DNA of 60,835 nucleotides, filler included, from Sluysia triapertura (taxonomy: Eukaryota), in the NCBI GenBank assembly GCA_046118255.1. It is 5 parts of 5 records of this genome, joined end to end, with 100 filler letters (N's around TTAATTAATTAA, not from the genome) between each part and the next. Parts side by side here need not be neighbours in the genome. Positions count along the whole stretch, not along the records: positions 23,966 to 37,543 come from JBJNIA010031714.1; 4 more parts are not named here. One strand, written 5' to 3'. The translations under genes and the position numbers were made by a program. Positions 23,966 through 37,543 of the stretch are shown piece after piece; position 1 is the first letter of the stretch, and each line of letters begins with the position of its first letter. The notes under the pieces are model-generated. The model saw only the letters and a list, made by a program, of their open reading frames with translations, did no database searches and was not told the DNA's origin.

Positions 23966-24997
23966 AGTTTGGTATAAAGCGTATATACTAAGCGAACTGA
24001 CCCTACAGATAATTTGTTAGGAATAAGGAAAAATCTAACAACAATATCATTACATTATTCTAAATTATATAATAATTACGTTGTTGTTATCATTATTATT
24101 TCTTTTATCCTTATTATAAATCTTTCTTCTTATTCTTTTATTTTTTCCAGCTTATGTATATATATACTTATGTATATATTTGTTTATGTGTTGTTCAAAC
24201 ATATTCCCAGAAACGATTGAGAAATTAATGATATTCAACGTATGAAACGCAAAGTATTTATGAGCGACTATCAGTTAGTTTGCTGTGACCTATCTCTCGA
24301 AAAATTTGTAGAATGTTCGTTGGTTTATCGAGACTGTGTCAACCAAGTACAAGTATACTAGTAATGTTATGTTGCTGCCAAGCAGTTTAACTATAGTAGA
24401 AGTAGAAACAAATGCCGATGACAATGATTCTACTAATACTTTATGGAAATCGTCTGAATTTAAATCAAATTCAAATGTGAAATATGTTCAACCGTGTTCC
24501 AATACACCTTCATCAATATCGTGTTGGTACAACTGTTCAAAGTCAAACAAATATTACATAAATGAAATGAAATTAAACGAATTAACTGTCAATGAAAATT
24601 CACAAAGTGACGAACTACCCGTGGAACCTGTATATTTTGAATATCCACTTATTAATCATTTCTATGATTCTAGTGACAGTTCCGACAGAGACTAGCTTAT
24701 TAGATAACTTGCGACACAACAGATCTATTCACAAGACAGTCACTGTCTATGACTGATGTAATACTGAATGATGCCCTAAAGAAACGTATTGCAGATTGAA
24801 AGAAAGAACAGTTAAAAATAAGCATAATTTAATATACAATTTAATATATATGTAACACATTTCAATTGTCTAAATCTATTATTATTTTTACCTTATTCAA
24901 TGAAACTAATAAGATTTTATTTTCAATAATAATAATAATAGAAATAAAAAAATCAATATTTATTATATTAATGACAGTAAGAACTTATACTACCAAA

Positions 24998-25375
24998 ATG
25001 TTAAATAATGTAATTTTAATATCGTTGTTATTTATTGCTTTATGTATACAATGTAATATGCCGGCCGAAAGTTTCATATGTAAAAATTGCAATGAACCAT
25101 CTAAACCTGAAAATGTCACTACCGTCTCTAATTGCACCAAAAGATTGGAAGTGGCGATTGAATCTCACTTTGACAGAATTTTTTCTGATATAAAATGTTC
25201 TCACATCTCATCACTTGGAGAGTATTCTACTGTCCGATTCTCAAAAAATTAGAAAATATGAAACTCTTGAATACAGCTACGTTTCTAACAGAAGATTACT
25301 TTCTTAATTGGTACAATACTGATGTGAGTACTTTATTATTTTTTTTGGTTGTATTTTATTATATTAATAAGAAAT
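24998..25375 (+). pseudogene. Small secreted Cys-rich protein (Ly6/three-finger-like?), possibly frameshifted
   Basis: Signal peptide MLNNVILISLLFIALCIQC, then FICKNC..C..C. A hydrophobic GPI-signal-like tail (STLLFFLVVFYYI) is in a shifted frame. Confidence 0.35.
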
Positions 25376-25624
25376 TAAATTTTGTTCCTTTTTTAAATCG
25401 TTATTTTTTACAGACCTTAAGTCTAGTTTGAAAATTAAAAGATTTATTATTATTTTGTTCGCTTTAATGTTAAATTTTAATAGTTTAGTAATTGATAAAT
25501 TAATTAGTTGGTTAATAGTTTCTAAATTAAAGTTAATTTGTTGTTATTTAGTTAATTTTTTAAATTTTCGTAAAACAAAATTAAAGATAAATAAAAAACC
25601 TTAAATTATTAACTCTGAAACATA

Positions 25625-26290
25625 ATACGCCCTCCACATAATAATATTTAAAATAAAAACATTTCCAAAGAATGAAGATTCTCAGAAAGGAATAATTGCC
25701 ACAGTAAATCGATTGTAAAATAATGATTGAACGAATAGATGAAGTTTGCAAAAGAAGACCCGATTAATTGTTTAGTCCATTATCAATGTTGATAGTTGAT
25801 TCAGCAAAGTCCCACTTAACTGATGATGTCAAAAAATAAAATTAAATATTGTTCCAGATTTTACAACCATTGAATATCTCAATTAATAGATCATTCAAAA
25901 GTATGTTGCGGGAATAATGAACTGATGAACAGCTAAAGGACCACATAGTTTTACTTAGGGTGGAGCTATGAAAAGAGTCTCTTTTGGTTTGATTGGATAA
26001 AAGGATCATGGATGATGTAACGATGAACGGCATCAAGGATGAATTTTATAGATCACCTATTTTATGTCGAGAAGACCTAAATAATAATGAAGTTGAAGAA
26101 AGTTTGGAATAGTTATCCAAACATTCAGATTGCTTGAGTTTGGATGAAGATTTTGAATAATTTTGAATAAATTATTTAAATTTTCTTTTAAATTTTAAAG
26201 TTTAGTTCAAATTCTGTTGTATAACTCCCAGTAAAGATTTAAAAAAACGTTATCCTTAGATAAACCGCTGCTTATTAACTGGATTTTAAT
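25625..26290 (+). mobile_element. pogo/Tigger-family DDE transposase relic
   Basis: SMLIVDSAKSHLTDDVKK and ILQPLNISINRSFKSMLRE match the DDE_1 motifs DS..H and LQPLD..N..FK. Contains stops and deletions. Confidence 0.8.
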
Positions 26291-28469
26291 TCCTGAGTTA
26301 TATTTAAATATTTTCGAAGAAAGACACATAATTCTGTAGGAATTGGTTGAAGATGTGGCAATAAATTCGTAAGATCAATTCAGTGATTATTATTTCACTT
26401 TGTCTTATATGGGACTCTGAATATCGAATATATTAGAAATTAAGCCAATTATGGGCAATTAGAGACTCATATAATCGACTGTCCGGCCAGCAGTTGGGCG
26501 CGTACAAAGCAATTTCTGTATTTTCAGTGATTCGAAACATCTATCAATATGTATCAATATGTGCATGATCTGGGTTTCCATTAATTCTTATTGAGGTTTC
26601 CTAAGGTCATTAAGGACATCGAATAGTTTATAGTTGTTAAGTATCTTTTGTGTCCTATATAAATTTTACTGGCTTTATATACAATTCAAAAGCCAGCTGA
26701 ATTGTACGCTTATAGCTATAATTAAAATTTTTATCTGATTAATAGAATAGGCACATGTTTTCTCTTTTAGATGAGTTAATATCGAAGTATTATTTTTTGA
26801 TGTTAAATTTTATTTCATTGTAACGTTAATGTATCTCAATACGGAGTTTATTTTAAATGTTTGTCGTCCAAACTTGATTCCTTATTATTTGGATATGTGA
26901 GAATCCCATATAATAAACCACAGTCACCGTTTTCGTAGGGATAATTGAAGTTTTTAAATCCTCTAAAATCTTTCGACCCAAATCCTAAAATTACATTGTT
27001 CCATTAAAATAGGAATCCTTATTTATCCGGTGACAGTTATTTTCGCGGACTATTTTTATTTTATTTAACAATGATTATACATTGTATTATTTTTATAGAA
27101 TCGAATGTAGTTTGAGTTTGCAGATAATTCGTTATTCTTCGAATTTGTGGGCATTGAGTTATTGATGTCTTCTGTTAATTGGTTTGAGATTAGTAATAGA
27201 TATATTATATTCGTGAAGTTGAAGTGATCTCTGAAGATTCTAGTTTGTAGGTATAAGTTCTTGTATCGGTTTACATAAATTGTTATTTCATGTCTTTATT
27301 GAAAAGGTCAAGTCTAATACAAAATTTTGTGAATAAGCACACGTTATAATGGCAAACAGAAGTAAAGTTTGTAAATTCCACTTTGTAATTGATGGGTAGC
27401 ATAAATCTAATGTTATTTGTTGCTTCTTCATAAGATGGAGTTCTGTAAATTGCAAACTTTCAACTATTCGTATTAATAGCAAAAGAATTAACATAGGTCT
27501 GTGTAGAAAAATAAATGGAATTATCGTCATAGGGTAAATAATGACCCATCTAATACTTCCTTATTAATAGTTGTGTTCGTGTCTTGATTTGGGTATTGTA
27601 ATATCAATGTGGGGATATATTTCGATATCATATTCAGCTAGTGCTAAATGCATCAGTTACATTTCGAATATCTCTTAAGTACATTAATGGTTTATGTATG
27701 GTGATTCAAATCTATTATTTAAATTTTCATCAAACACAAATAAACAAAGCGTCACATTTAACTCTCAAAATATTCGACAAATACTCAATCGCACACAAAC
27801 ATAAAAACCTCAAAAATCTTAAAATGAAGCATAGGTTTAATAGCAATGAAATTTCTATAATAAAAATTTCAATTATTCCTAACCTTCTTTCATGTTTATT
27901 TCTCTCAACTAAAAACATGTGATGCTTAAATTAGCAGAATCAAAAGCAATATTACTTATATTACAAAATGAAATCGGAAACTGAATTAAAAAATGAGCAA
28001 TTATGGCTATATCTATATCTAAATCTGGTATTCGATTAGTTGAACAGAATCTACAGAAAATTCTTTAAAAATTCTCATAGCAAAACATCACAAACATAAA
28101 GTTACATCTTTTTGTGTAGCTTCATAAACACAAAAAATATAAAGTTTCATCTTGTTTCAAAATACAGTAGATCTTATCATTGATGTTAGAGAACAAGAAG
28201 AAGGAGATGCGTTATGGTGTAACACTTCAAGATTCTGCAAACCCTAGCAATGATTTTAGTTTAAATGTTGTTGTAGAATTATTTTTATTTAAAATTTCTT
28301 TGTTAAAATTAACATAAATAATTATATTCTTTGAAAAACAAAGTATCATCAAGATAAGACTTGAAAACAAATCTATTAAACATATGACACATTGAGAAAA
28401 GAAATTGAAAAGGTGTATCATCATTAAAGACAGAATAAGATATAGGATTAACAAATCTTACTTCATGAA

Positions 28470-29055
28470 CTCTACAGCCAAATAATGTTATAAAAGGTAA
28501 GACCATAAATCATCTTCTATCATTTAGCCGAAGTTTACCACAAAATTAGAGATGTTAGATGTAAGCCACTGCATGAAACTAATAGAACTGTCACGTGATC
28601 ATATGTTGCCAGTACCGACTTCATTAACTGTATTATTCATGGTTTAGCATTATTCTTGACATCTGCCCATTCCAATATTTCGGAATTACTAACATGTATA
28701 ATGGTAGAATTAATAAAAAATCATTTGGTGTACATGTTAAAATAACTTTAAAACCTGATTTAATATCATCAAATTCAATGACATAAGGCTAACTAAAGAT
28801 TGTATTAAATACTCGTTATGTTGGGTAGTTATAGTTATTAACTGCGGATGATTATTAAGAGCATTGAGCCATAAATTTGGAATAGATTTTACTGAGTTAG
28901 CACGTCGCTGAAATAATGGTTGTCTTTTTAAATCACATTTATTCCCTACTTCTAGTATTTCTTCAACAGCTTGAGCGTTCAATTTATCAACATCGCTTTG
29001 TAATTCATCACATATTTCGATTAAAGATCTCAACATTTCATCCTGAATAACTTTG
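28470..29055 (-). pseudogene. SET: Intronless SET/TAF-I (NAP-family histone chaperone) copy with frameshifts and stops
   Basis: IEICDELQSDVDKLNAQAVEEILEVGNKCDLKRQPLFQRRANSVKSIPNLWLNALNNHPQL, then after a frameshift VIEFDDIKSGFKVILTCTPNDF, then SFMQWLT..FG*MIEDDLWSYLL*HYL. These are colinear with SET (DEVQNEIDRLNEQASEEIL..RQPFFQKR..IPNFW..NHPQ; VTEFEDIKSGY; SFFTWF..IKDDIWPNPLQYYL). Confidence 0.85.
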
Positions 29056-29574
29056 CTGTAAGTTAGTTATAAAAATTGTGGTCGACAATAAATTGATAGT
29101 ATGAAATTGTATTGTCGTAAGAAAATGATTTTAGTTGTGGTTATATATCGGAGGATTTTGCAACTGTTTATCACTAAAAGATGTATCTGCAATTTCCTTA
29201 CTATGATAATAGAATCCTGATTTTGATCTTTACGTTTAAAATTAACAACAGCAGATATCCTGCCATTTATTGGTAGTTCTTTAAATAAACTTCAAAATAA
29301 AAACATTTTCCTACATTTATGTTCAAATCATTTGGGCCGGTAAAATTGCAGTAAATGAATGTGAAACAGCAGTAGCCTTTTGTGCAGTTACAAGATAATA
29401 ATAAGACATTCTTCTGTCTTGCCTTCTACATTTTTTCGTAGTTCGGTGCTTGTGTCATGAGCTGATTCTATTGTTGAACATAATTATTCGGTATCCCCAT
29501 CTCCACTATTTGGTTTGACAATTCTTCGAACAGAGAACAAAGATTCTGCATCGTGTAAAATAGGAAAGCCCCAC

Positions 29575-29847
29575 TGTGGTTCTGTTTCATGAGTAGTTCC
29601 AGTGTGTTTAATATCTTAGCCACAATTAAGAGGATAGTACTAAGAATAACAGGCAGTTGTGAGAAAGCGAGGATAATGAAGGAAATTATGGCAGATAATT
29701 GAGAGAAATTGCTGTTAAATTATAGAAATTTCATTTTCTTCTTTTTGATTAATTTTAAACTTGAAATTATTGAAATTTAATATATTAAGTGGTTTAGGTG
29801 TTGCGTGGTTGTGTTATAGAGTATTTAAAATGAGTTGGGTCACCACA
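29575..29847 (-). repeat. 5' LTR (273 bp) with adjacent primer-binding-site-like sequence
   Basis: TGTGGT...ACCACA terminal inverted hexamers, followed after 1 nt by TGGGGCTTTCC (29573-29563). Confidence 0.65.
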
Positions 29848-30935
29848 ATTATCAAGAGATCGTATCTTCAAAACCAATTAATTATGAAATTATCAACAAT
29901 CAATTCCATTCTTTAATTCTTTAATGTCTGAATTAGATGTTAATCCAGGAAAAATAACTACCGACTTCTTTTCGTCAACAAGAAGTTAATTATGTTGGTA
30001 GTTCTTTACAGTTATCGAATATAATGTTTGAAAATCGAAGTTTAAACGAAGAAATGATTATCTAAATATTTAAGCATTTAAATGGAAATAATAATAACAC
30101 CATGAGTTCGGTAGCTTTGTGGGATTTGTTGAAATTGGCCATTCTATTTGTCGGACCCAGTGATTGTATGCTACCTTCCATTAAAAGACAATCCATACGC
30201 AAGTGAACACCGTAGAGCAATTTGGACATAGAAAAATGAAGCCGAAATTATTTTGGTAATTGAAACCATAATCGAAAAGTATTCGTAATTTTAAATGCAC
30301 AATTTCTGTCGAAAAGAAATGCGTGGAAAGTTTAGTTTATTTCGATTCTACAACACAGAGTGTACTCGCAGATGCATGTTCAACATTCGATGTTACTACA
30401 GATACAGAAATTAAAAAAAGAGGTCAGAATATAAAAGATGAAAATTCTAAATTAGCGGAAAAGGAATTTATAAATAAAAAAGTATAGAAACTCCACGCGA
30501 GAGAGATAAAAGGACCTAGATCAAGTTTTAGGATATGAAGAAAAACTGATAAAGTGAAACTAATTCTTGAGAAACGACTACAAAAATATGTATATTAAAA
30601 GTATGAAAATGTAATCTTGTCCGATAGAAAATAACATTTGTTTAACCAATAAAGAAAACATGTAAATTGAGAAATGTAAACAAAACATCATCTTTAATCA
30701 ATGGTCTTTCTGCATAATCAACGACGAAATTATGAACAATGAATTTTGCAATTATTCGCTGTCAGTTTCTAGTTGACACAGCAACGGTGCCATGCACGGA
30801 TTTAATATTCTCAATTGATGGTGCATTTATTCCATCCTTCGACAAAACCACGTCAGCTTTTTCAAGTCGCTTAAAGAAAATTAAGAAAGATAAGCATTAG
30901 ATCCAGAAAATATTCTTATTTATTTGTGATATTAC

Positions 30936-31206
30936 NNNNNNNNNNNNNNNNNNNNNNNNNNNNNNNNNNNNNNNNNNNNNNNNNNNNNNNNNNNNNNNNN
31001 NNNNNNNNNNNNNNNNNNNNNNNNNNNNNNNNNNNNNNNNNNNNNNNNNNNNNNNNNNNNNNNNNNNNNNNNNNNNNNNNNNNNNNNNNNNNNNNNNNNN
31101 NNNNNNNNNNNNNNNNNNNNNNNNNNNNNNNNNNNNNNNNNNNNNNNNNNNNNNNNNNNNNNNNNNNNNNNNNNNNNNNNNNNNNNNNNNNNNNNNNNNN
31201 NNNNNN
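30936..31206. other. Assembly gap
   Basis: Run of N. Confidence 0.95.
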
Positions 31207-31889
31207 ATTATAATAATATTAGTAATAATAATATTGATAATATAATAATAATAATTATTATTCATCCTCGGGAATTGGTAATGCGGATTTCCAAAGTAGC
31301 GATTGGCTCTGCCAGGAATTTAACATTGGAATCAGTTACTAGTGGTCCAAATCGAGTAGAACAAAAAGAATGCTTGAAGAATGTTGTTGATATTATTGTT
31401 GCAACATCGAATTTTGATGAGGCAGAAAGGAAAATGGAAACCAAATTTCTAGCTCAAGCTAAGGAAGTATTTTTTGCTTTTAGATGAAATTTCAGTGTTT
31501 AATGATGTTAATTGGCAAAGTTATTTTTAAATCACATAATGATGACAACTATTCAATTTTCTCCATATATAAAGTATTTGATTTTGACTATTTTTATAAA
31601 AATTTTTTGTATAGTAGATTTTTGTTGTAAAGTAAATTCAAATTATTTTCAGAAATTTTTGTTTAATAATTTTAATAGTATAAAGAACCTTAAGTCCATT
31701 TTCGTTAATTGGGAATATAATATTCATACTTTTAAAAATGGAATGGGCCTTAAGCCCAACTTTTATAGTCTCATTTACAATTATTTTATTATAATTCATA
31801 ACATAATTTCATTCATTATAACCCGGCCATTTAATGGTTTCGCGTAAACAAAAATAACAATTATGGAGGTTATATAAAACGTTAAATAA

Positions 31890-32197
31890 AGCTGCAATGT
31901 TTCAAAAATAGCAATCTGTTTCACACATCACGAACATGGTTCGAATAACGCCAGCTGCTTTGAGCACATCGCGGTAAAATTGACTATCTCCGTCTGTAAT
32001 TCTATCAAAACTTTTATAAAGATTTTGCATCAGAATTTTGCATCATCTTCAAAAATTTTTTGAAAATAAACACTTTGATAACTCAATATTAATTTGTGGG
32101 CTTGAACCAATGAATCAGGTGTTTTAATTACAGTATCGGTCAAATTTTTTTATTCAGATATATCTTCTCTTTGTTACCTTTCAAAAATGTTACCCAT
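31890..32197 (-). pseudogene. BTB/POZ-domain pseudogene
   Basis: LTDTVIKTPDSLVQAHKLILSYQSVYFQKIF matches the BTB consensus D....F.AHK.IL...S.YF..MF. Frameshifts and stops are present. Confidence 0.7.
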
Positions 32198-32699
32198 CTT
32201 TTAAAAATTAATCGCAAAAAGTAATATTAAAACAAAAATTTAAATTATACATTTCTTAACGTTAATTATACAAAATAAAGAGAACAGCACGCAATAGATT
32301 AATCATTTTGCAGTGTAAACTGCAAATAAATGTGTTCTAACGTTGGTTGAGATTTAGATTGTGGTTTACCATTTAGTACATTCGGTTGTGATTTAAGTTG
32401 TATTTTATTATTTAAAAATCTTAATTTTAAATTACAATCACGATTATCAATTAAGTTCTTTATATCATTTAAAATTGGATAACTTGTCAACTTCTTAAAA
32501 ATTTTAATTAAATTTAAATTTACTTCAGTAACACATGAAGAACGAAAAAAATTTTATTTAAGTTAAAAGTTTGTTTGATATTCGTCATTTCTTGCACGTG
32601 TCTCGATCTTAGACTTTTAACACTCCTAAAAAATAATAACATATATGAATAAATGTTTGTAGAAATAATAACACAATCAAAATTAAAAGTTAAAATTAC

Positions 32700-33879
32700 T
32701 TTTGAATCGTTTTCGTTCATGCAGTGAGCATAGACCATAGTCAAAGATAATATCGAAGAAGAGTTTTTGAAAAGACGATATTTAGAAGACTTCCGCCGAT
32801 AACTTCGAATGTTTGTCTTTGAGATTTTTGTTGAGGTGTAAAATCGATTAATATATGACATTTGTTTAAATCTGTTTGACTTAACATTGATTCATCATTT
32901 AACTTCTCTATGCATACTAATGAATTAAGACCGATGATGCTAAATGGAACTGTTGTCAATTTTACCAATATAACGAATGATTCCTCAAATTGTTTGTTTT
33001 TGCATAATATTCTTGAATATTGACAATTAATTTCGGAACTTACTATTGAGTCTTCCTTCACTAAGTGTGCTGATTTAACTAACATTAGAGCTAACTTGAA
33101 ACCCTCATTATGCGAACAAGCTTGAACTACTTGTAATCCCGATTTAATAACTAAATCGCATATTTGGTTAATGACCTCATCTCTCTTAGGACTTCCGTAG
33201 TCATTATCGTGATTGTAAATTGTCAGTGATGGCTTGAGAAGCATAAAATTCGATGCATCGTTATCTATATATAAATACGAATAGAAATTGTTCATTTCAG
33301 TACTGACGCTATTTGCTACTTCGTGAGAATTTATAGAATGACTATCGTCATTGAATCTTCGGAATTTTATATGAATGCTAGATAACCAAAAATCTGGATT
33401 TCCATTATTATTTTGAAAATGGTTCTCACTTGTCGAAAGTGGAGTCTTTCATTTAATAGACATCTTGTCTGCATTCTGGTACACCCTGATGATATTACGT
33501 ATAAGTTTAGTAAGAATTGTTCCAGATTATCAAAATACATTGGATTAGCTTTTGTGAGATATTCTAAAATAAATCGTTGTAACTCATAAGTTAATTTGAA
33601 TGAATTCTGTAACTTCATTTTATCAGTTTTATGGTTTTGTTCGTACAAACTACGCAATCTATAAACATCAGTAATAGTAAACAGTAACACTTTTAATACA
33701 CTAAAAGAAACATCTTGTATTAAAAACACTCCGGTTGACTTTCCTTTTACTACTTTAATCTTTGTAGACAAAGTTTTAGCATAATTAATAACATTTAATA
33801 AGGAAAATTCTAAATCGCTTATTTCATTCAGTATAATTTGCAGACAATTTAATTCGTTTTTCAAAATACTTTTGTTCAT
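32700..33879 (-). pseudogene. Orphan gene or pseudogene split into 170-aa and 184-aa ORFs
   Basis: Adjacent co-oriented long ORFs with protein-like composition; no recognised domain. Confidence 0.45.
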
Positions 33880-34292
33880 TTTTAATTTTTTAACTCAGAA
33901 ATCGGTAAGGTAACTTTTGTTATTTTTACAATCGTTATTTTATGACAATAAGTAAAATAGTTGACAAAAAATTTTTTAGCTGTTGAGAATGGCTGCCCAA
34001 TTAAAAGAAGAGAAGCTAACGTTGTGTGTAATTTTTATGGGGCAGTCAGTAAAATATTTAGTACAAGGAAAATAAGGCATGTAATGAGCTGTAAACGCAA
34101 CCACTATCAATTGTGACAATAAGCTGTACATATGAATTAATAATAAAATTAAAAACAGTGATAATGATAATAATAACAATAATGTTATTATTATTAAATG
34201 CATAAATCTTTTGCAAATTTCATGATCTTTCTGAATTTCTTTTATTTCTAAACATTTAAAGTTCTTAACATAATTTAAATATCTTTATTTAC

Positions 34293-34682
34293 TGTGATGC
34301 TAGTTCTTTTTTGATTACTATGTTTTAAATTGATTTTATAATGTGACTTTGATATTTTTCGATGATCTACAAGATTGACTGTTGAAAAATTATGAACTTG
34401 AAATGTTTTAGATTAGTTTTAAATGTATATTTGATAGTTTAAGGTGTAAATTGTTGTTTTAATGTTGTGAGATTATAAGTTAAAATGTCCTAAATGAAAT
34501 TTAAATGTGCATTAATGATTTTGGATATAAGTATGGTTTTGGTGTAAGATTGTGAATTTAAAATGTTTTGAAATGTAAAAAGGTTTTAATATGTCTAGGA
34601 AAGTGAAATGTAAGATGTAAGAATATATGATATTCTGTATGAATTAATAGTTTGAATTCCAAGTGAAAGGTTGGCCATCACA
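34293..34682 (-). mobile_element. Solo LTR-like element
   Basis: TGTGATG...CATCACA terminal inverted repeats and strong strand-composition skew, as in the other LTR-like repeats. Flanks TTTAC/CTAAC match only partly. Confidence 0.5.
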
Positions 34683-35176
34683 CTAACAGTTCAAGGACTT
34701 AATTACCATTTTTACATTTTGACTGTTAACAAATTATATAAACAGGAAAATAAAATTATTCTGAAATGCTTCTATATATCTCGTCACATTTTTAATTGAT
34801 TCTAATTTATTAAAGTAGCTCGACGATGATACATTTTTTAGAGACATCATGTTCAGTATTACACTAAGATGTTCATTAAATTTGTATAATAAACAGTAAT
34901 TTATCACCCATTTTACCAGGTTCTGTTATTGTCAAATACAACCTCAAAACTTTTCCTAAACTGTGAATCTTTAATAGGAATTGTTTGTAATGATGCTATT
35001 CTTTCATAATAACCAGAATTTCTCATAAAGACCACGACAGGAATTTGAGAAACAATTTCATCTACATTTTGTGTTTTAAAATCTTCGAGTTCATCCATTA
35101 TTAATTATCAATTTTGATTAATTGAATTGTATTTTTATTCCACATAATAAATTGTGTAGGGAATTAAAATTTCAGG

Positions 35177-35428
35177 TGTGCTGCTAAAGTGGACGAAAGA
35201 GATATCAACAAGAACATCTATTATTAATTTATAAATAATAAAACTTGTAGATTAGTATGGTTTTATATATCGTATGATGATGAAGATAGAAATTGTTTCT
35301 TTAGACCAGCGACAGATTTTAATTGCTATTGTGGGAGAATTGAATTTTCATTGCAAGAATTATACGATAATGTCGATATTTTATTAACGAACGACACTCT
35401 TCATATTCGAGTTGACGCTGGTGTTTAA
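35177..35428 (+). pseudogene. TRAF-type MATH domain C-terminal fragment
   Basis: CFFRPATDFNCYCGRIEFSLQELYDNVDILLTNDTLHIRVDAGV* resembles TRAF FQRP...N...G...F......DDTIFIRV. The upstream VLLKW frame is interrupted by stops. Confidence 0.55.
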
Positions 35429-35773
35429 CTGTGACAATTTATATTTTTACATTAATTAAATGTGCGATCAACAATGACGATAAATATGACGCACTTCTTA
35501 AGGGGTTGGAATTAATAGAAGTACACTTTGTCAATTAACTTAATTAAAATCTTTGAAATTAATTAAATAGAAGCAGTAAATACAAAATTAATTTTTAATA
35601 ATGATACATTTTAATTAGTTCTAAATGTTATTATTTGTTGAATCATACAATTTCTGCTGATATTTATACTAAATTCTTTGACCTTAAATGATCCTTCATT
35701 ATTAATATTATTATTGTGTCAGTATTATTATTATTAATATGTTATTATTGTCATGTTAGCTTTAATTCTTTTC

Positions 35774-35945
35774 TATACGAATTCTTCTGACAATTGTTTA
35801 TAAAGATCCTGCTCCACTCCGTTAAATTTTCTCATTTCTGGTAGTGACATCGTAGCACGAATATCTCTGGCTAATTGAGCCATATATTCTCTAAAGTTGT
35901 AAAGCCATGCCATTGTTACTGTACGATATCTAAGTTGAGTTTGAT
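35774..35945 (-). CDS. Possible exon of an unknown gene (may link to 34913-35098)
   Basis: Open coding-like frame YRTVTMAWLYNFREYMAQLARDIRATMSLPEMRKFNGVEQDLYKQLSEEF. Confidence 0.3.
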
Positions 35946-36340
35946 AATCGTCTTAATAGCAACTTATGTAACTTAAAATCTTATAAATCATTCTTATAAT
36001 TGTTGTTGGGGTTAATAAAATAAATATAAACTTATAAAATTTATCACTTGTAATAAACCTATAGAATTTATGTCTTATGTCAGTTATTCTTATATGATGC
36101 TCCTCACTCTGGCACCAGTTTTATTGAGGAGGAAAAGAGTTATGAAAATATAAATTGTAAAGTGAGTCCATCTGCGATCCTTAAGGGCTACTTGGTATGA
36201 TTTTTATTTGTAAGATATTTTCTTAATGGAGATCAATCTTATATATTTGCAGCTAATGTTTAAGGCCATTCTAACTGTCTTTTAATGCCAATCGATTTGT
36301 TGTCCGCTCATAAGCGAGATTAAATGGTAAATATTTTATG

Positions 36341-36578
36341 TGTTGTGTCTTTTATACTTTTATTTTAAATTATCAAACTATAACCCAATAATTAAAGAAA
36401 TTCAGAATCTCAATATGTCACAATTATATAGTAAAAATTCTTATACATTAATACACTTTTATATAAATATAACTAATAAAGTTCTTTAAACAAAACACCT
36501 TCAATATATAGTTTTACTGTCAACTTTAAAATTATGAATCTCTAATATTAATAAATCACAACATGGGACGACACAACT
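36341..36578 (+). repeat. LTR-like repeat (second partial copy at ~37443-37543)
   Basis: TGTTGTGTC...GACACAAC termini. The first ~90 bp are homologous to the sequence just before the 37544 spacer. Confidence 0.45.
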
Positions 36579-37543
36579 TAAATGAAATCAATAAAAAAAG
36601 AAATAAAATATACAAACTACGAACTCCTTTTTCTTATTAAAATCCCCCATATGTATTTTAGTTTTCTGCTGAAGAATAAACCTCCATTTCAATGTTTTCC
36701 ACAAATGAATTGAGACAATGTCTCTAAAACTACAAGAGTCTTCGAGTTTTTCTTTATCTGTCTTATTTTTCTGTTTATCTGCATAAAATATGACTGTTTT
36801 TACGATAATTTAGGAAATTGGAAATTGGACAAGACAGATATTAAAACTGTTCATTCTTATTAGTCGGTGATGATTCGACCAATTTTTCTGATTAAATTTC
36901 ACCAGTAATTTCCTTCTTTGTTCAATTGCATTCTCTTTATAATTATCTTAAGATAATGTTATTTTCACAACATCATTAAATTAAATTTTAATATTACTAT
37001 GATGTAGCTATTCTATCAATAATGCAATTTGTTAACTTAAATTAAGGATAAAATTAATGAAATAATAAATTTATTTTTCTATAATAATCTTTTGTATAAT
37101 ATGTCGTGCGTCAAATGTACATTGTACATCAAGTTCAATAATATATTTGAATTGATTCGTTCATGAATTACTATTTATTCGATAATTGTTACTTCATTTT
37201 TTACTTTTATTTCGTCGAGGGAAATGTTTTCAATTTGGTATGATTCCTTACTTTACTGATTGGTCAATTAAATAATTCACAAATTTAAACTTTTAAACTT
37301 TTAATTCGATGCAAATTCGTTAAGGTCTATTAAAAAACAATTAATATTACTGTAAATACAAAATGAATACAAAATAGATACAAAGAATATATAAAAGATA
37401 TAAAGGTTTAAGGCTCAGGATAACTTAATAAGATGAACGTTATGTTGTGTCTTTTATCACTTTTAATTTCCCAGATTATTAGATTAGAACTCAATAACTA
37501 AATAAACTCAAAATCTCGATATATTCGTTATATTATCACAAAA

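What the first reader, a model, noticed from the sequence alone, without database searches (positions are those of the whole stretch)
26900..29847. Gypsy retrotransposon carrying a SET/NAP histone-chaperone gene between LTR and pol
Seen: on one strand, a TGTGGT..ACCACA LTR, a TGG-initiated PBS-like site, ~500 bp of leader or gag-like sequence, a near-complete intronless SET/TAF-I coding copy lacking the acidic tail, then immediately RT (YLDD), RNase H (HKPL, LAEYDIEI) and integrase remnants. The N-terminal half of RT is missing where SET sits. Known: SET is a histone chaperone and PP2A inhibitor, and LTR elements can capture mRNAs by template switching. Inference: this is either a one-off LTR-mediated retrocopy or a relic of a family that propagated a chromatin-chaperone cargo (possible anti-silencing or integration aid). 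The SET copy looks strongly diverged for a normally conserved protein, which would fit a long history as cargo.
Basis: partly seen in the sequence, partly recalled or inferred. Interest (0 to 1): 0.8.

Follow-up and report, generated by a model that had tools for sequence, protein, structure and literature searches.

The report
Dead SET retrocopy fused to gypsy fragment
A broken, intron-free copy of the host histone-chaperone gene SET sits head-to-tail against the rear part of a decayed gypsy-type retrotransposon polymerase gene, which is the known scar of a retrotransposon copying a host mRNA by mistake, not evidence of a working gene cargo.

Summary
The SET part is real. Minus strand 29054-28470 aligns without introns to residues 15-219 of a 244-aa SET protein (frameshift-aware score 511, null 30±4). 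It is dead: three 1-nt deletions and three in-frame stops. It has no acidic tail, no poly(A) and no target-site duplication.

Gypsy pol is only weakly recoverable. Pfam, PDB, BLAST and a first small 5-sequence HMM found nothing on the stop-free pieces. A 29-element profile puts its best hit of the whole piece on HKPL..LAEYDIEI (27696-27618). The YLDD block lies 231 aa upstream, where 233 is expected (p about 0.001).

Integrase, gag, PBS and an LTR pair are not supported. There is no second LTR, and the 500-bp "leader" is single-copy in the source run.

The best reading is LTR-mediated retroposition. Reverse transcriptase switched template from gypsy RNA to SET mRNA, which replaced the front of pol.

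Contigs of the source run show that the SET core occurs in about 25 diverged contigs. Most of them seem to share this copy's first frameshift, so dead copies multiplied. Whether those copies share the SET|RT junction could not be tested.

This is a known kind of event and of modest interest. A functional chaperone cargo is unlikely, about 10%.

The parts
28470..29054 (-). Intronless SET/TAF-I (NAP family) pseudo-copy, equivalent to residues 15-219 of the 244-aa SET protein P0001. It lacks the acidic tail.
   Evidence: Pfam NAP E=2e-7. Human SET in the PDB E=1.4e-15. tblastn E=5e-46. Frameshift-aware DP score 511 against null 30.5±3.8. Traceback gives 118 of 193 codons identical.
28783..28785 (-). 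First 1-nt deletion (frameshift) in the SET copy. Further frameshifts lie at about 28722 and about 28642. In-frame stops lie at 28599-28601, 28524-28526 and 28488-28490.
   Evidence: Traceback. In the source run 8 other contigs carry an extra base behind 28784 that keeps the frame, but they make up only 125 of 580 depth units there (table 4).
28360..28469 (-). Junction zone between the last SET codon and the RT motif-C block. It has no significant similarity to either partner.
   Evidence: The SET alignment ends at 28470. Per-column profile scores upstream of YLDD are neutral. The 3' UTR and tail of the P0001 transcript do not align.
28312..28359 (-). Remnant of reverse-transcriptase motif C (SYLDDTLFF...).
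   Evidence: The best position of the profile's YxDD block over both strands of the piece is 28359. It was predicted at 28364 from the RNase H-end anchor. p<=0.001 against about 950 null windows. hhalign also places the piece on YLDDILI, though without significance (E=0.26).
27618..27696 (-). End of the RNase H domain and the linker motif of a Ty3/gypsy pol (HKPLMYLRDIRNVT / MHLA..LAEYDIEI), with one frameshift.
   Evidence: Best profile alignment of the whole piece, score 54.5, profile columns 369-399. Four independent references end their best alignment at 27618. The best single BLAST hit is L036, HQPLCYLNSIKNVT. The loose-end consensus of 3 other contigs at 27656 translates to TGRLARWSLT (table 7).
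27608..29079 (-). Block that is multicopy in the source run (SET + RT-C + RNase H). It is bounded on both sides by near single-copy DNA.
   Evidence: table 2. Summed contig depth inside the block is 56-904. Depth is 16-36 at 29080-29631 and about 20-58 at 26320-27607. The locus's own contigs have depth 14-21 (table 8).
29080..29575 (-). It is single-copy and has no protein-family hit.
   Evidence: table 2. No RT-N blocks were found here.
29576..29847 (-). It is an unverified repeat. Its core, 29632-29815, is multicopy (about 33 contigs).
   Evidence: tables 2 and 3. No second copy exists in the piece.

Best explanation
This is a relic of LTR-mediated retroposition. Inside a virus-like particle of a Ty3/gypsy-type element, reverse transcriptase was copying the element's RNA from its 3' end. 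In the middle of the RT gene it jumped onto a co-packaged host SET mRNA, landing just upstream of that mRNA's acidic-tail coding repeat. It then ran on towards the mRNA's 5' end. The resulting DNA carries SET residues about 15-219 in place of gag, protease and the front half of RT, joined in the same orientation to the rear of RT and to RNase H. SET was a passive passenger.

The copy here is dead, with three frameshifts and three stops. It is also truncated: no integrase and no LTRs are detectable. It does nothing today.

Shown: the SET copy and its defects, the lack of tail, poly(A) and target-site duplication, the colinear and correctly spaced RT motif C and RNase H-end remnants, and the absence of RT-N.

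Inferred: the template switch itself, and the idea that the ~25 other SET-like contigs in the genome (most apparently sharing this copy's first frameshift) are later copies of a dead progenitor. I put the chance that they carry the same SET|RT junction at about 35-40%.
For: The copy is truncated at the 3' end but nearly complete at the 5' end. It has no D/E tail, and no target-site duplication beyond chance at the ends of the SET+pol block. No A-rich tract is seen by eye on the minus strand downstream of that block. This is the opposite of LINE-type retrocopies. It matches the features listed for LTR-mediated retrocopies: part of the internal ORF is replaced, the 3' end is truncated, and there is no poly(A) or duplication (PMC5131818).

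The pol remnants lie on the same strand directly downstream. YLDD and HKPL..LAEYDIEI are each the best match in the piece for their profile block, and they are spaced 231 aa apart where 233 is expected. RT-N is absent both under SET and upstream of it.

Other copies of the pol family read GRLARW at the expected place (table 7).

At six non-synonymous sites, the majority letters in other contigs restore the residue of functional SET. This copy's differences are therefore private decay (residue index corrected by one).
Against: No LTR, PBS, gag or integrase can be verified, so SET is not shown to be flanked by element sequence on its 5' side, which the published cases are.

The pol evidence is thin. 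It consists of two short blocks. The anchor score of 54.5 is only just above the best unrelated real-sequence windows (52 and 50). Pfam, PDB, BLAST and hhalign all fail.

Microsimilarity at the junction cannot be examined, because neither the parent SET gene nor the family's pol is in hand.

The sequence just upstream of the first aligned SET codon looks like a splice acceptor (CTAAC..TTACAG). The homology starts near the conserved position of SET intron 1. This could mean a DNA-level or pre-mRNA origin.
Confidence: 0.5

Rival explanations
1. Chance neighbours. This would be one member of a dispersed family of dead SET pseudogene copies, amplified by some other route such as retrocopying of a transcribed pseudogene or DNA-level duplication. 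It would have landed beside or inside an old gypsy fragment. Later deletions would then have removed SET's 3' end and the front of pol, giving a tight junction by accident.
For: The SET core is multicopy, and most contigs seem to share the frameshift at 28784, so amplification did not need the gypsy part (table 4). The flanks on both sides are single-copy (table 2). Contig numbers differ between SET (about 26), RNase H (about 49) and the junction bin (low) (tables 2 and 3). There is an acceptor-like sequence at the start of SET homology.
Against: This reading needs the same orientation, a 3' truncation of SET and a 5' truncation of pol, all meeting within about 110 nt. No trace remains of a SET tail, UTR or poly(A), or of RT-N on the other side.
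Confidence: 0.2
2. Functional cargo family. A gypsy lineage would have carried an expressed SET/NAP chaperone ORF, kept by selection as an aid to integration or against silencing. It would have multiplied, and this is one decayed member.
For: About 25 SET-like contigs are at least 80% similar in the conserved NAP core, and fewer in the variable loop. That unevenness could reflect past protein-level selection. 8 contigs keep the reading frame where this copy is broken (tables 3-5). Copy numbers of SET, pol and the LTR-like repeat are of the same order.
Against: About three quarters of the depth at 28784 lacks the frame-restoring base, so most copies descend from an already broken SET (table 4). 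The stretch between the candidate LTR and SET is single-copy, so no LTR-leader-SET unit was propagated. The ten longest of the 150 listed NAP-hit proteins have no RT, RNase H or integrase domain. Two full-text searches found no paper on a NAP or SET domain in a retroelement.
Confidence: 0.1
3. The pol motifs are chance matches in AT-rich DNA. The locus would then be only a SET pseudogene, either a retrocopy or a decayed paralogue exon, next to unrelated repeats.
For: Every standard search on the pieces fails. Whole-piece shuffles reach the anchor score in 2 of 20 trials. Real-sequence windows reach 50-52.
Against: Two independent blocks both have their best match of the whole piece here, on one strand, at the right spacing (chance about 1e-3). 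Four references converge on 27618. The consensus of other contigs reads GRLARW just where that motif belongs.
Confidence: 0.1

Closest known systems
LTR-mediated retrocopies of animals (Tan et al. 2016, Genome Res 26:1663, PMC5131818)
   Same: An intronless partial copy of a host mRNA replaces part of the internal ORFs of an LTR retrotransposon. The 3' end is truncated and there is no poly(A) or target-site duplication. Some such chimeras are copied again as non-autonomous elements.
   Different: Those cases are young and have element sequence and LTRs on both sides, with microsimilarity measured at both junctions. Here only the 3' partner (RT-C and RNase H) is detectable, no LTR is verified, the locus is old and decayed, and microsimilarity cannot be tested.
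Bs1 of maize (Elrouby and Bureau, as cited in PMC5131818)
   Same: An LTR element whose interior holds pieces of host genes, present in a few copies that share the same switch points.
   Different: Bs1 keeps both LTRs and an ORF and is transcribed. Here shared junctions are untested and the SET frame is broken.
Acutely transforming retroviruses (v-onc capture). This comparison rests on my own knowledge, not a tool result.
   Same: A host cDNA replaces gag/pol sequence. The result is replication-defective and can spread only with a helper.
   Different: Those retroviruses carry an expressed, selected cargo between intact LTRs. Nothing here shows expression or selection.
LINE-type processed pseudogenes
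   Same: An intronless dead copy of a highly expressed host gene that occurs many times in the genome.
   Different: LINE copies keep the 3' end with poly(A) and target-site duplications and are truncated at the 5' end. This copy is the reverse.

Membership tests
SET/TAF-I (NAP family, PF00956) coding sequence | Homology to the NAP domain, including the N-terminal dimerisation helix and the IPNFW / EFDDIKSG core | tested here: met
SET/TAF-I (NAP family, PF00956) coding sequence | C-terminal acidic tail | tested here: not met
   The alignment stops at residue 219 of 244. No 15-aa window with 8 or more D/E residues exists in any frame of the piece.
SET/TAF-I (NAP family, PF00956) coding sequence | Open reading frame (a functional gene) | tested here: not met
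   3 frameshifts and 3 in-frame stops.
LTR-mediated retrocopy | Intronless copy of a host mRNA | tested here: inconclusive
   The copy is colinear with the P0001 protein and has no intron-sized gaps. The parent gene's intron positions are unknown, and an acceptor-like CTAAC..TTACAG precedes the first aligned codon.
LTR-mediated retrocopy | The copy replaces part of the element's internal ORF rather than interrupting it | tested here: met
   The RT-N blocks are absent under SET and upstream of it. RT motif C and the RNase H end follow at the right spacing.
LTR-mediated retrocopy | Element sequence and LTRs on both sides | tested here: not met
   The 5' flank 29080-29631 is single-copy with no family hit. 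There is no LTR pair. The 3' side ends at about 27618 without integrase.
LTR-mediated retrocopy | Microsimilarity at the switch points | not testable with these tools
   This needs the parent SET mRNA and an intact family member from this genome.
LTR-mediated retrocopy | 3' truncation with no poly(A) and no target-site duplication | tested here: met
Ty3/gypsy (Metaviridae) LTR retrotransposon | Pair of long terminal repeats | tested here: not met
Ty3/gypsy (Metaviridae) LTR retrotransposon | RT followed by RNase H in the order typical of gypsy pol | tested here: inconclusive
   Only motif C and the RNase H-end/linker block are recovered, colinear and correctly spaced. Pfam fails.
Ty3/gypsy (Metaviridae) LTR retrotransposon | Integrase downstream of RNase H | tested here: not met
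   Profile columns 400-745 against 27617-25600 score 31, against a null of 35±5. The anchored integrase blocks give p=0.2-0.6.
Ty3/gypsy (Metaviridae) LTR retrotransposon | gag, protease and a PBS complementary to a tRNA | tested here: inconclusive
   There is no Pfam hit upstream. No tRNA gene in the piece is available for comparison. gag is too variable for a negative result to count.
LINE-type processed pseudogene | Complete 3' end with poly(A) and flanking target-site duplication | tested here: not met

The most novel reading that the evidence does not exclude
A Ty3/gypsy lineage of this poorly sampled, AT-rich invertebrate carried a SET/NAP histone-chaperone ORF in place of gag-PR-RT(N) and multiplied to 20 or more copies with helper elements. 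The 8 contigs that keep the reading frame where this copy is broken would be surviving open cargo copies.
Probability: 0.1. Interest if true: 0.7.

Novelty: new member of a known kind. Interest (0 to 1): 0.3.

Why it matters
As it stands, this is one more old example of retrotransposon-mediated copying of a host mRNA, in a lineage where such events have not been described. It is useful for annotation, because it is a pseudogene and not a second SET gene. It also hints that LTR elements, rather than LINEs, make retrocopies in this genome. It would matter more only if the roughly 25 other SET-like copies share the SET|RT junction, or if some are open and expressed. In that case a chromatin chaperone would have been a retroelement passenger on a scale not reported before.

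Tried and rejected
- Pfam on 20 stop-free pieces: only NAP was found.
- PDB phmmer on the RT piece and on the second SET piece: nothing.
- Word search with the 109-aa SET piece: no candidate, because of its length window.
- ESM Atlas on the RT piece: no usable hit.
- tblastn, a 5-sequence HMM, hhalign and frameshift-aware DP with plant/fungal-type gypsy pols from IMG/VR: no signal above shuffles. This is why closer references were fished from metagenomes with a motif pattern.
- Two further motif scans of viral contigs: empty.
- My own first reading of an integrase H2C2 finger at 27291-27560 and of LLGFAES, LDIDIA and ERNKHERRLGII as RT/RNase H motifs: rejected. Their spacing is wrong by 28-48 aa, and the anchored blocks there are not significant.
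- The GTAAGA 'donor' after the last SET codon: more likely a decayed start of the acidic tail, so nothing rests on it.
- 5' UTR/exon-1 and tail/3' UTR of the P0001 transcript against the flanks: no similarity. This is uninformative, because the coding sequence itself is only about 70% identical at DNA level.
- Target-site duplication search at the block ends: only a chance-level 7-mer.
- tRNA and Rfam scans: empty.
- The ten longest of the 150 listed NAP hits: no NAP-RT fusion.
- Disclosure: one search printed the consensus line of the search profile, which was built from 29 very diverse environmental LTR-element pols. The saved copy was deleted and the line is not used or reproduced. No consensus of this genome's copies was made.
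Full report
**Setting.** The piece (23966-37543) has 22-31% G+C and comes from a eukaryote. Its SET-like sequence is closest to SET of spiralian animals. Everything discussed lies on the minus strand.

**The SET copy.**
- The 109-aa stop-free piece 28740-29066 matches Pfam NAP (E=2e-7) and human SET in the PDB (E=1.4e-15, about 50% identity over 78 aa).
- A full HMMER search of 1.84 billion representatives gave one outstanding relative, P0001. It is a 244-aa SET with an acidic tail, found in two soil metatranscriptome contigs (66% identity, E=8e-30).
- P0001 is itself only about 51% identical to any other SET, so this lineage is poorly sampled and divergent.
- Local tblastn and my frameshift-aware alignment map P0001 residues 15-219 onto window 29054-28470 with no intron-sized gap. 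The score is 511 against 30.5±3.8 for dinucleotide shuffles, and 118 of 193 codons are identical.
- The copy has three 1-nt deletions (about 28784, 28722 and 28642), three in-frame stops and two short in-frame deletions.
- It ends exactly where the acidic tail should begin. No D/E-rich stretch exists in any frame of the piece.
- DNA identity to the P0001 transcript is about 70-73%, so P0001 is an orthologue from another species, not the parent gene.

**The pol remnants.**
- Standard tools fail on the stop-free pieces: Pfam, PDB, ESM Atlas, BLAST with a 1113-aa gypsy pol fetched from IMG/VR, a 5-sequence HMM, hhalign, and frameshift-aware alignment to those references.
- I then fished 58 loci from metagenome contigs with a degenerate RLARW..E[FY]D.E pattern. 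About 40 of them carry gypsy-type pol.
- With these references, the best BLAST hit of 19 queries against the whole piece is L036 HQPLCYLNSIKNVT against window HKPLMYLRDIRNVT. Four references end their best frameshift-aware alignment at the same base, 27618.
- A 29-sequence profile gives its best alignment of the piece, on either strand, at 27696-27618 (HKPLMYLRDIRNVT / MHLA..LAEYDIEI; score 54.5).
- On its own this is weak. 2 of 20 whole-piece shuffles reach the score, and unrelated real windows reach 50-52.
- The independent test is the anchored one. Taking that hit as anchor, the profile's YxDD block is predicted at 28364 and found at 28359. Its score is at least as high as every one of about 950 null windows. 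It is also that block's best position in the whole piece on both strands. The observed spacing is 231 aa and the profile spacing is 233.
- Blocks of the N-terminal half of RT are absent under SET and anywhere in 29060-30900.
- The integrase part of the profile finds nothing downstream (31.3 against 35.2±4.7).
- I conclude that the rear of RT and the end of RNase H of a gypsy-type pol are probably there (about 85%). Integrase is not.

**LTR, PBS and leader.**
- No direct repeat of 25 nt or more and no sensitive BLAST match gives a second LTR.
- The 6-nt TGTGGT/ACCACA ends are not evidence on their own.
- The 500 bp between the candidate LTR and SET has no family hit.

**What the reads add.** These are contigs of the source-like run X1, laid at 80% likeness.
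- The locus's own contigs have depth 14-21, so this exact locus is single-copy.
- Summed depth is 56-904 across 27608-29079, which is precisely SET plus the pol remnants. It falls to 16-36 at 29080-29631 and to about 20-58 at 26320-27607. The 'leader' is therefore not part of any repeat family, which argues against a propagated LTR-leader-SET unit.
- The SET core (28712-28895) is covered by about 18-26 other contigs. At six non-synonymous sites their majority letter restores the residue of P0001 (residue index corrected by one). This copy's differences are therefore private decay.
- At the first frameshift, 8 contigs carry an extra base that keeps the SET frame, but they hold only 125 of 580 depth units (table 4). 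No better-supported insertion nearby is listed. I infer that most other copies share this frameshift and so descend from an already dead SET. This inference rests on one table row and should be checked on the assembly.
- Three contigs that match the window down to 27656 continue with a sequence that translates to TGRLARWSLT. That is the motif which precedes ..EYD.EI in gypsy pols (compare RIVRW in L006). The repeat family covering 27608-27975 is therefore a gypsy-type pol.
- Whether any other contig bridges SET to RT cannot be read from the tables shown, and the reads tools are capped at one call.

**Mechanism.** A LINE-made pseudogene keeps its 3' end with poly(A) and target-site duplications and loses its 5' end. 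This copy does the reverse, and no duplication beyond chance flanks the block. The structure matches LTR-mediated retroposition as described for flies, mosquito, fish, chicken and mammals. [quoted passage not shown] In that model, minus-strand synthesis proceeds from the 3' end of the element RNA and switches to a co-packaged mRNA. That predicts exactly a 3'-truncated SET joined to the rear of pol. What is missing here is the second junction back into the element, and the LTRs. Either they were lost or the cDNA was inserted by another route.

**Alternatives.**
- Chance juxtaposition of a member of a dead-SET repeat family with a gypsy fragment, followed by deletions: 0.2.
- A functional cargo family: 0.1. 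It is disfavoured by the shared frameshift and the single-copy leader.
- The pol motifs being chance: 0.1.
- An ambiguity remains at the 5' end. The first aligned codon is preceded by CTAAC..TTACAG, and the homology starts within a few residues of the conserved first intron of SET (that position is from my own knowledge of human SET isoforms). The same bases can also be read as decayed exon-1 codons, so I draw no conclusion.

**Verdict.** This is a new example of a known kind of event, and interest is about 0.3.

Noticed in passing
window 30552-30900 (runs into the N gap at 30926): An extremely high-copy repeat in the source run. Summed contig depth is about 9200 against about 17 for single-copy DNA, with up to 64 contigs carrying variant letters. 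A 53-aa ORF on the + strand has no Pfam hit.
   Followed up: partly
window 25400-26319: Another multicopy stretch (summed depth 190-1320, up to 40 variant contigs), unrelated to the SET/pol block.
   Followed up: no
window 27724-27960: A run labelled as a different organism (X2) holds a 237-nt contig identical to this stretch at depth 2.3, and nothing else of the locus. This suggests low-level cross-contamination or a very close relative.
   Followed up: no
window 32741-33295 and 33367-33879, minus strand: Two long open frames (184 and 170 aa) with no Pfam hit. They may be exons of a lineage-specific gene. The pol profile gives a near-background hit at the start of the first (..YIDNDAS..), which is probably chance.
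   Followed up: partly
L001/L002 (protein P0001): The nearest SET protein comes from soil metatranscriptomes and stands alone. The next best of 1023 hits is 51% identical. The window's organism and this relative therefore belong to a clade that is barely represented in protein databases.
   Followed up: partly
window 29059-29078, minus strand: A branch-point-like CTAAC followed by TTACAG lies immediately before the first SET-homologous codon. It is either a retained intron end or a coincidence.
   Followed up: partly
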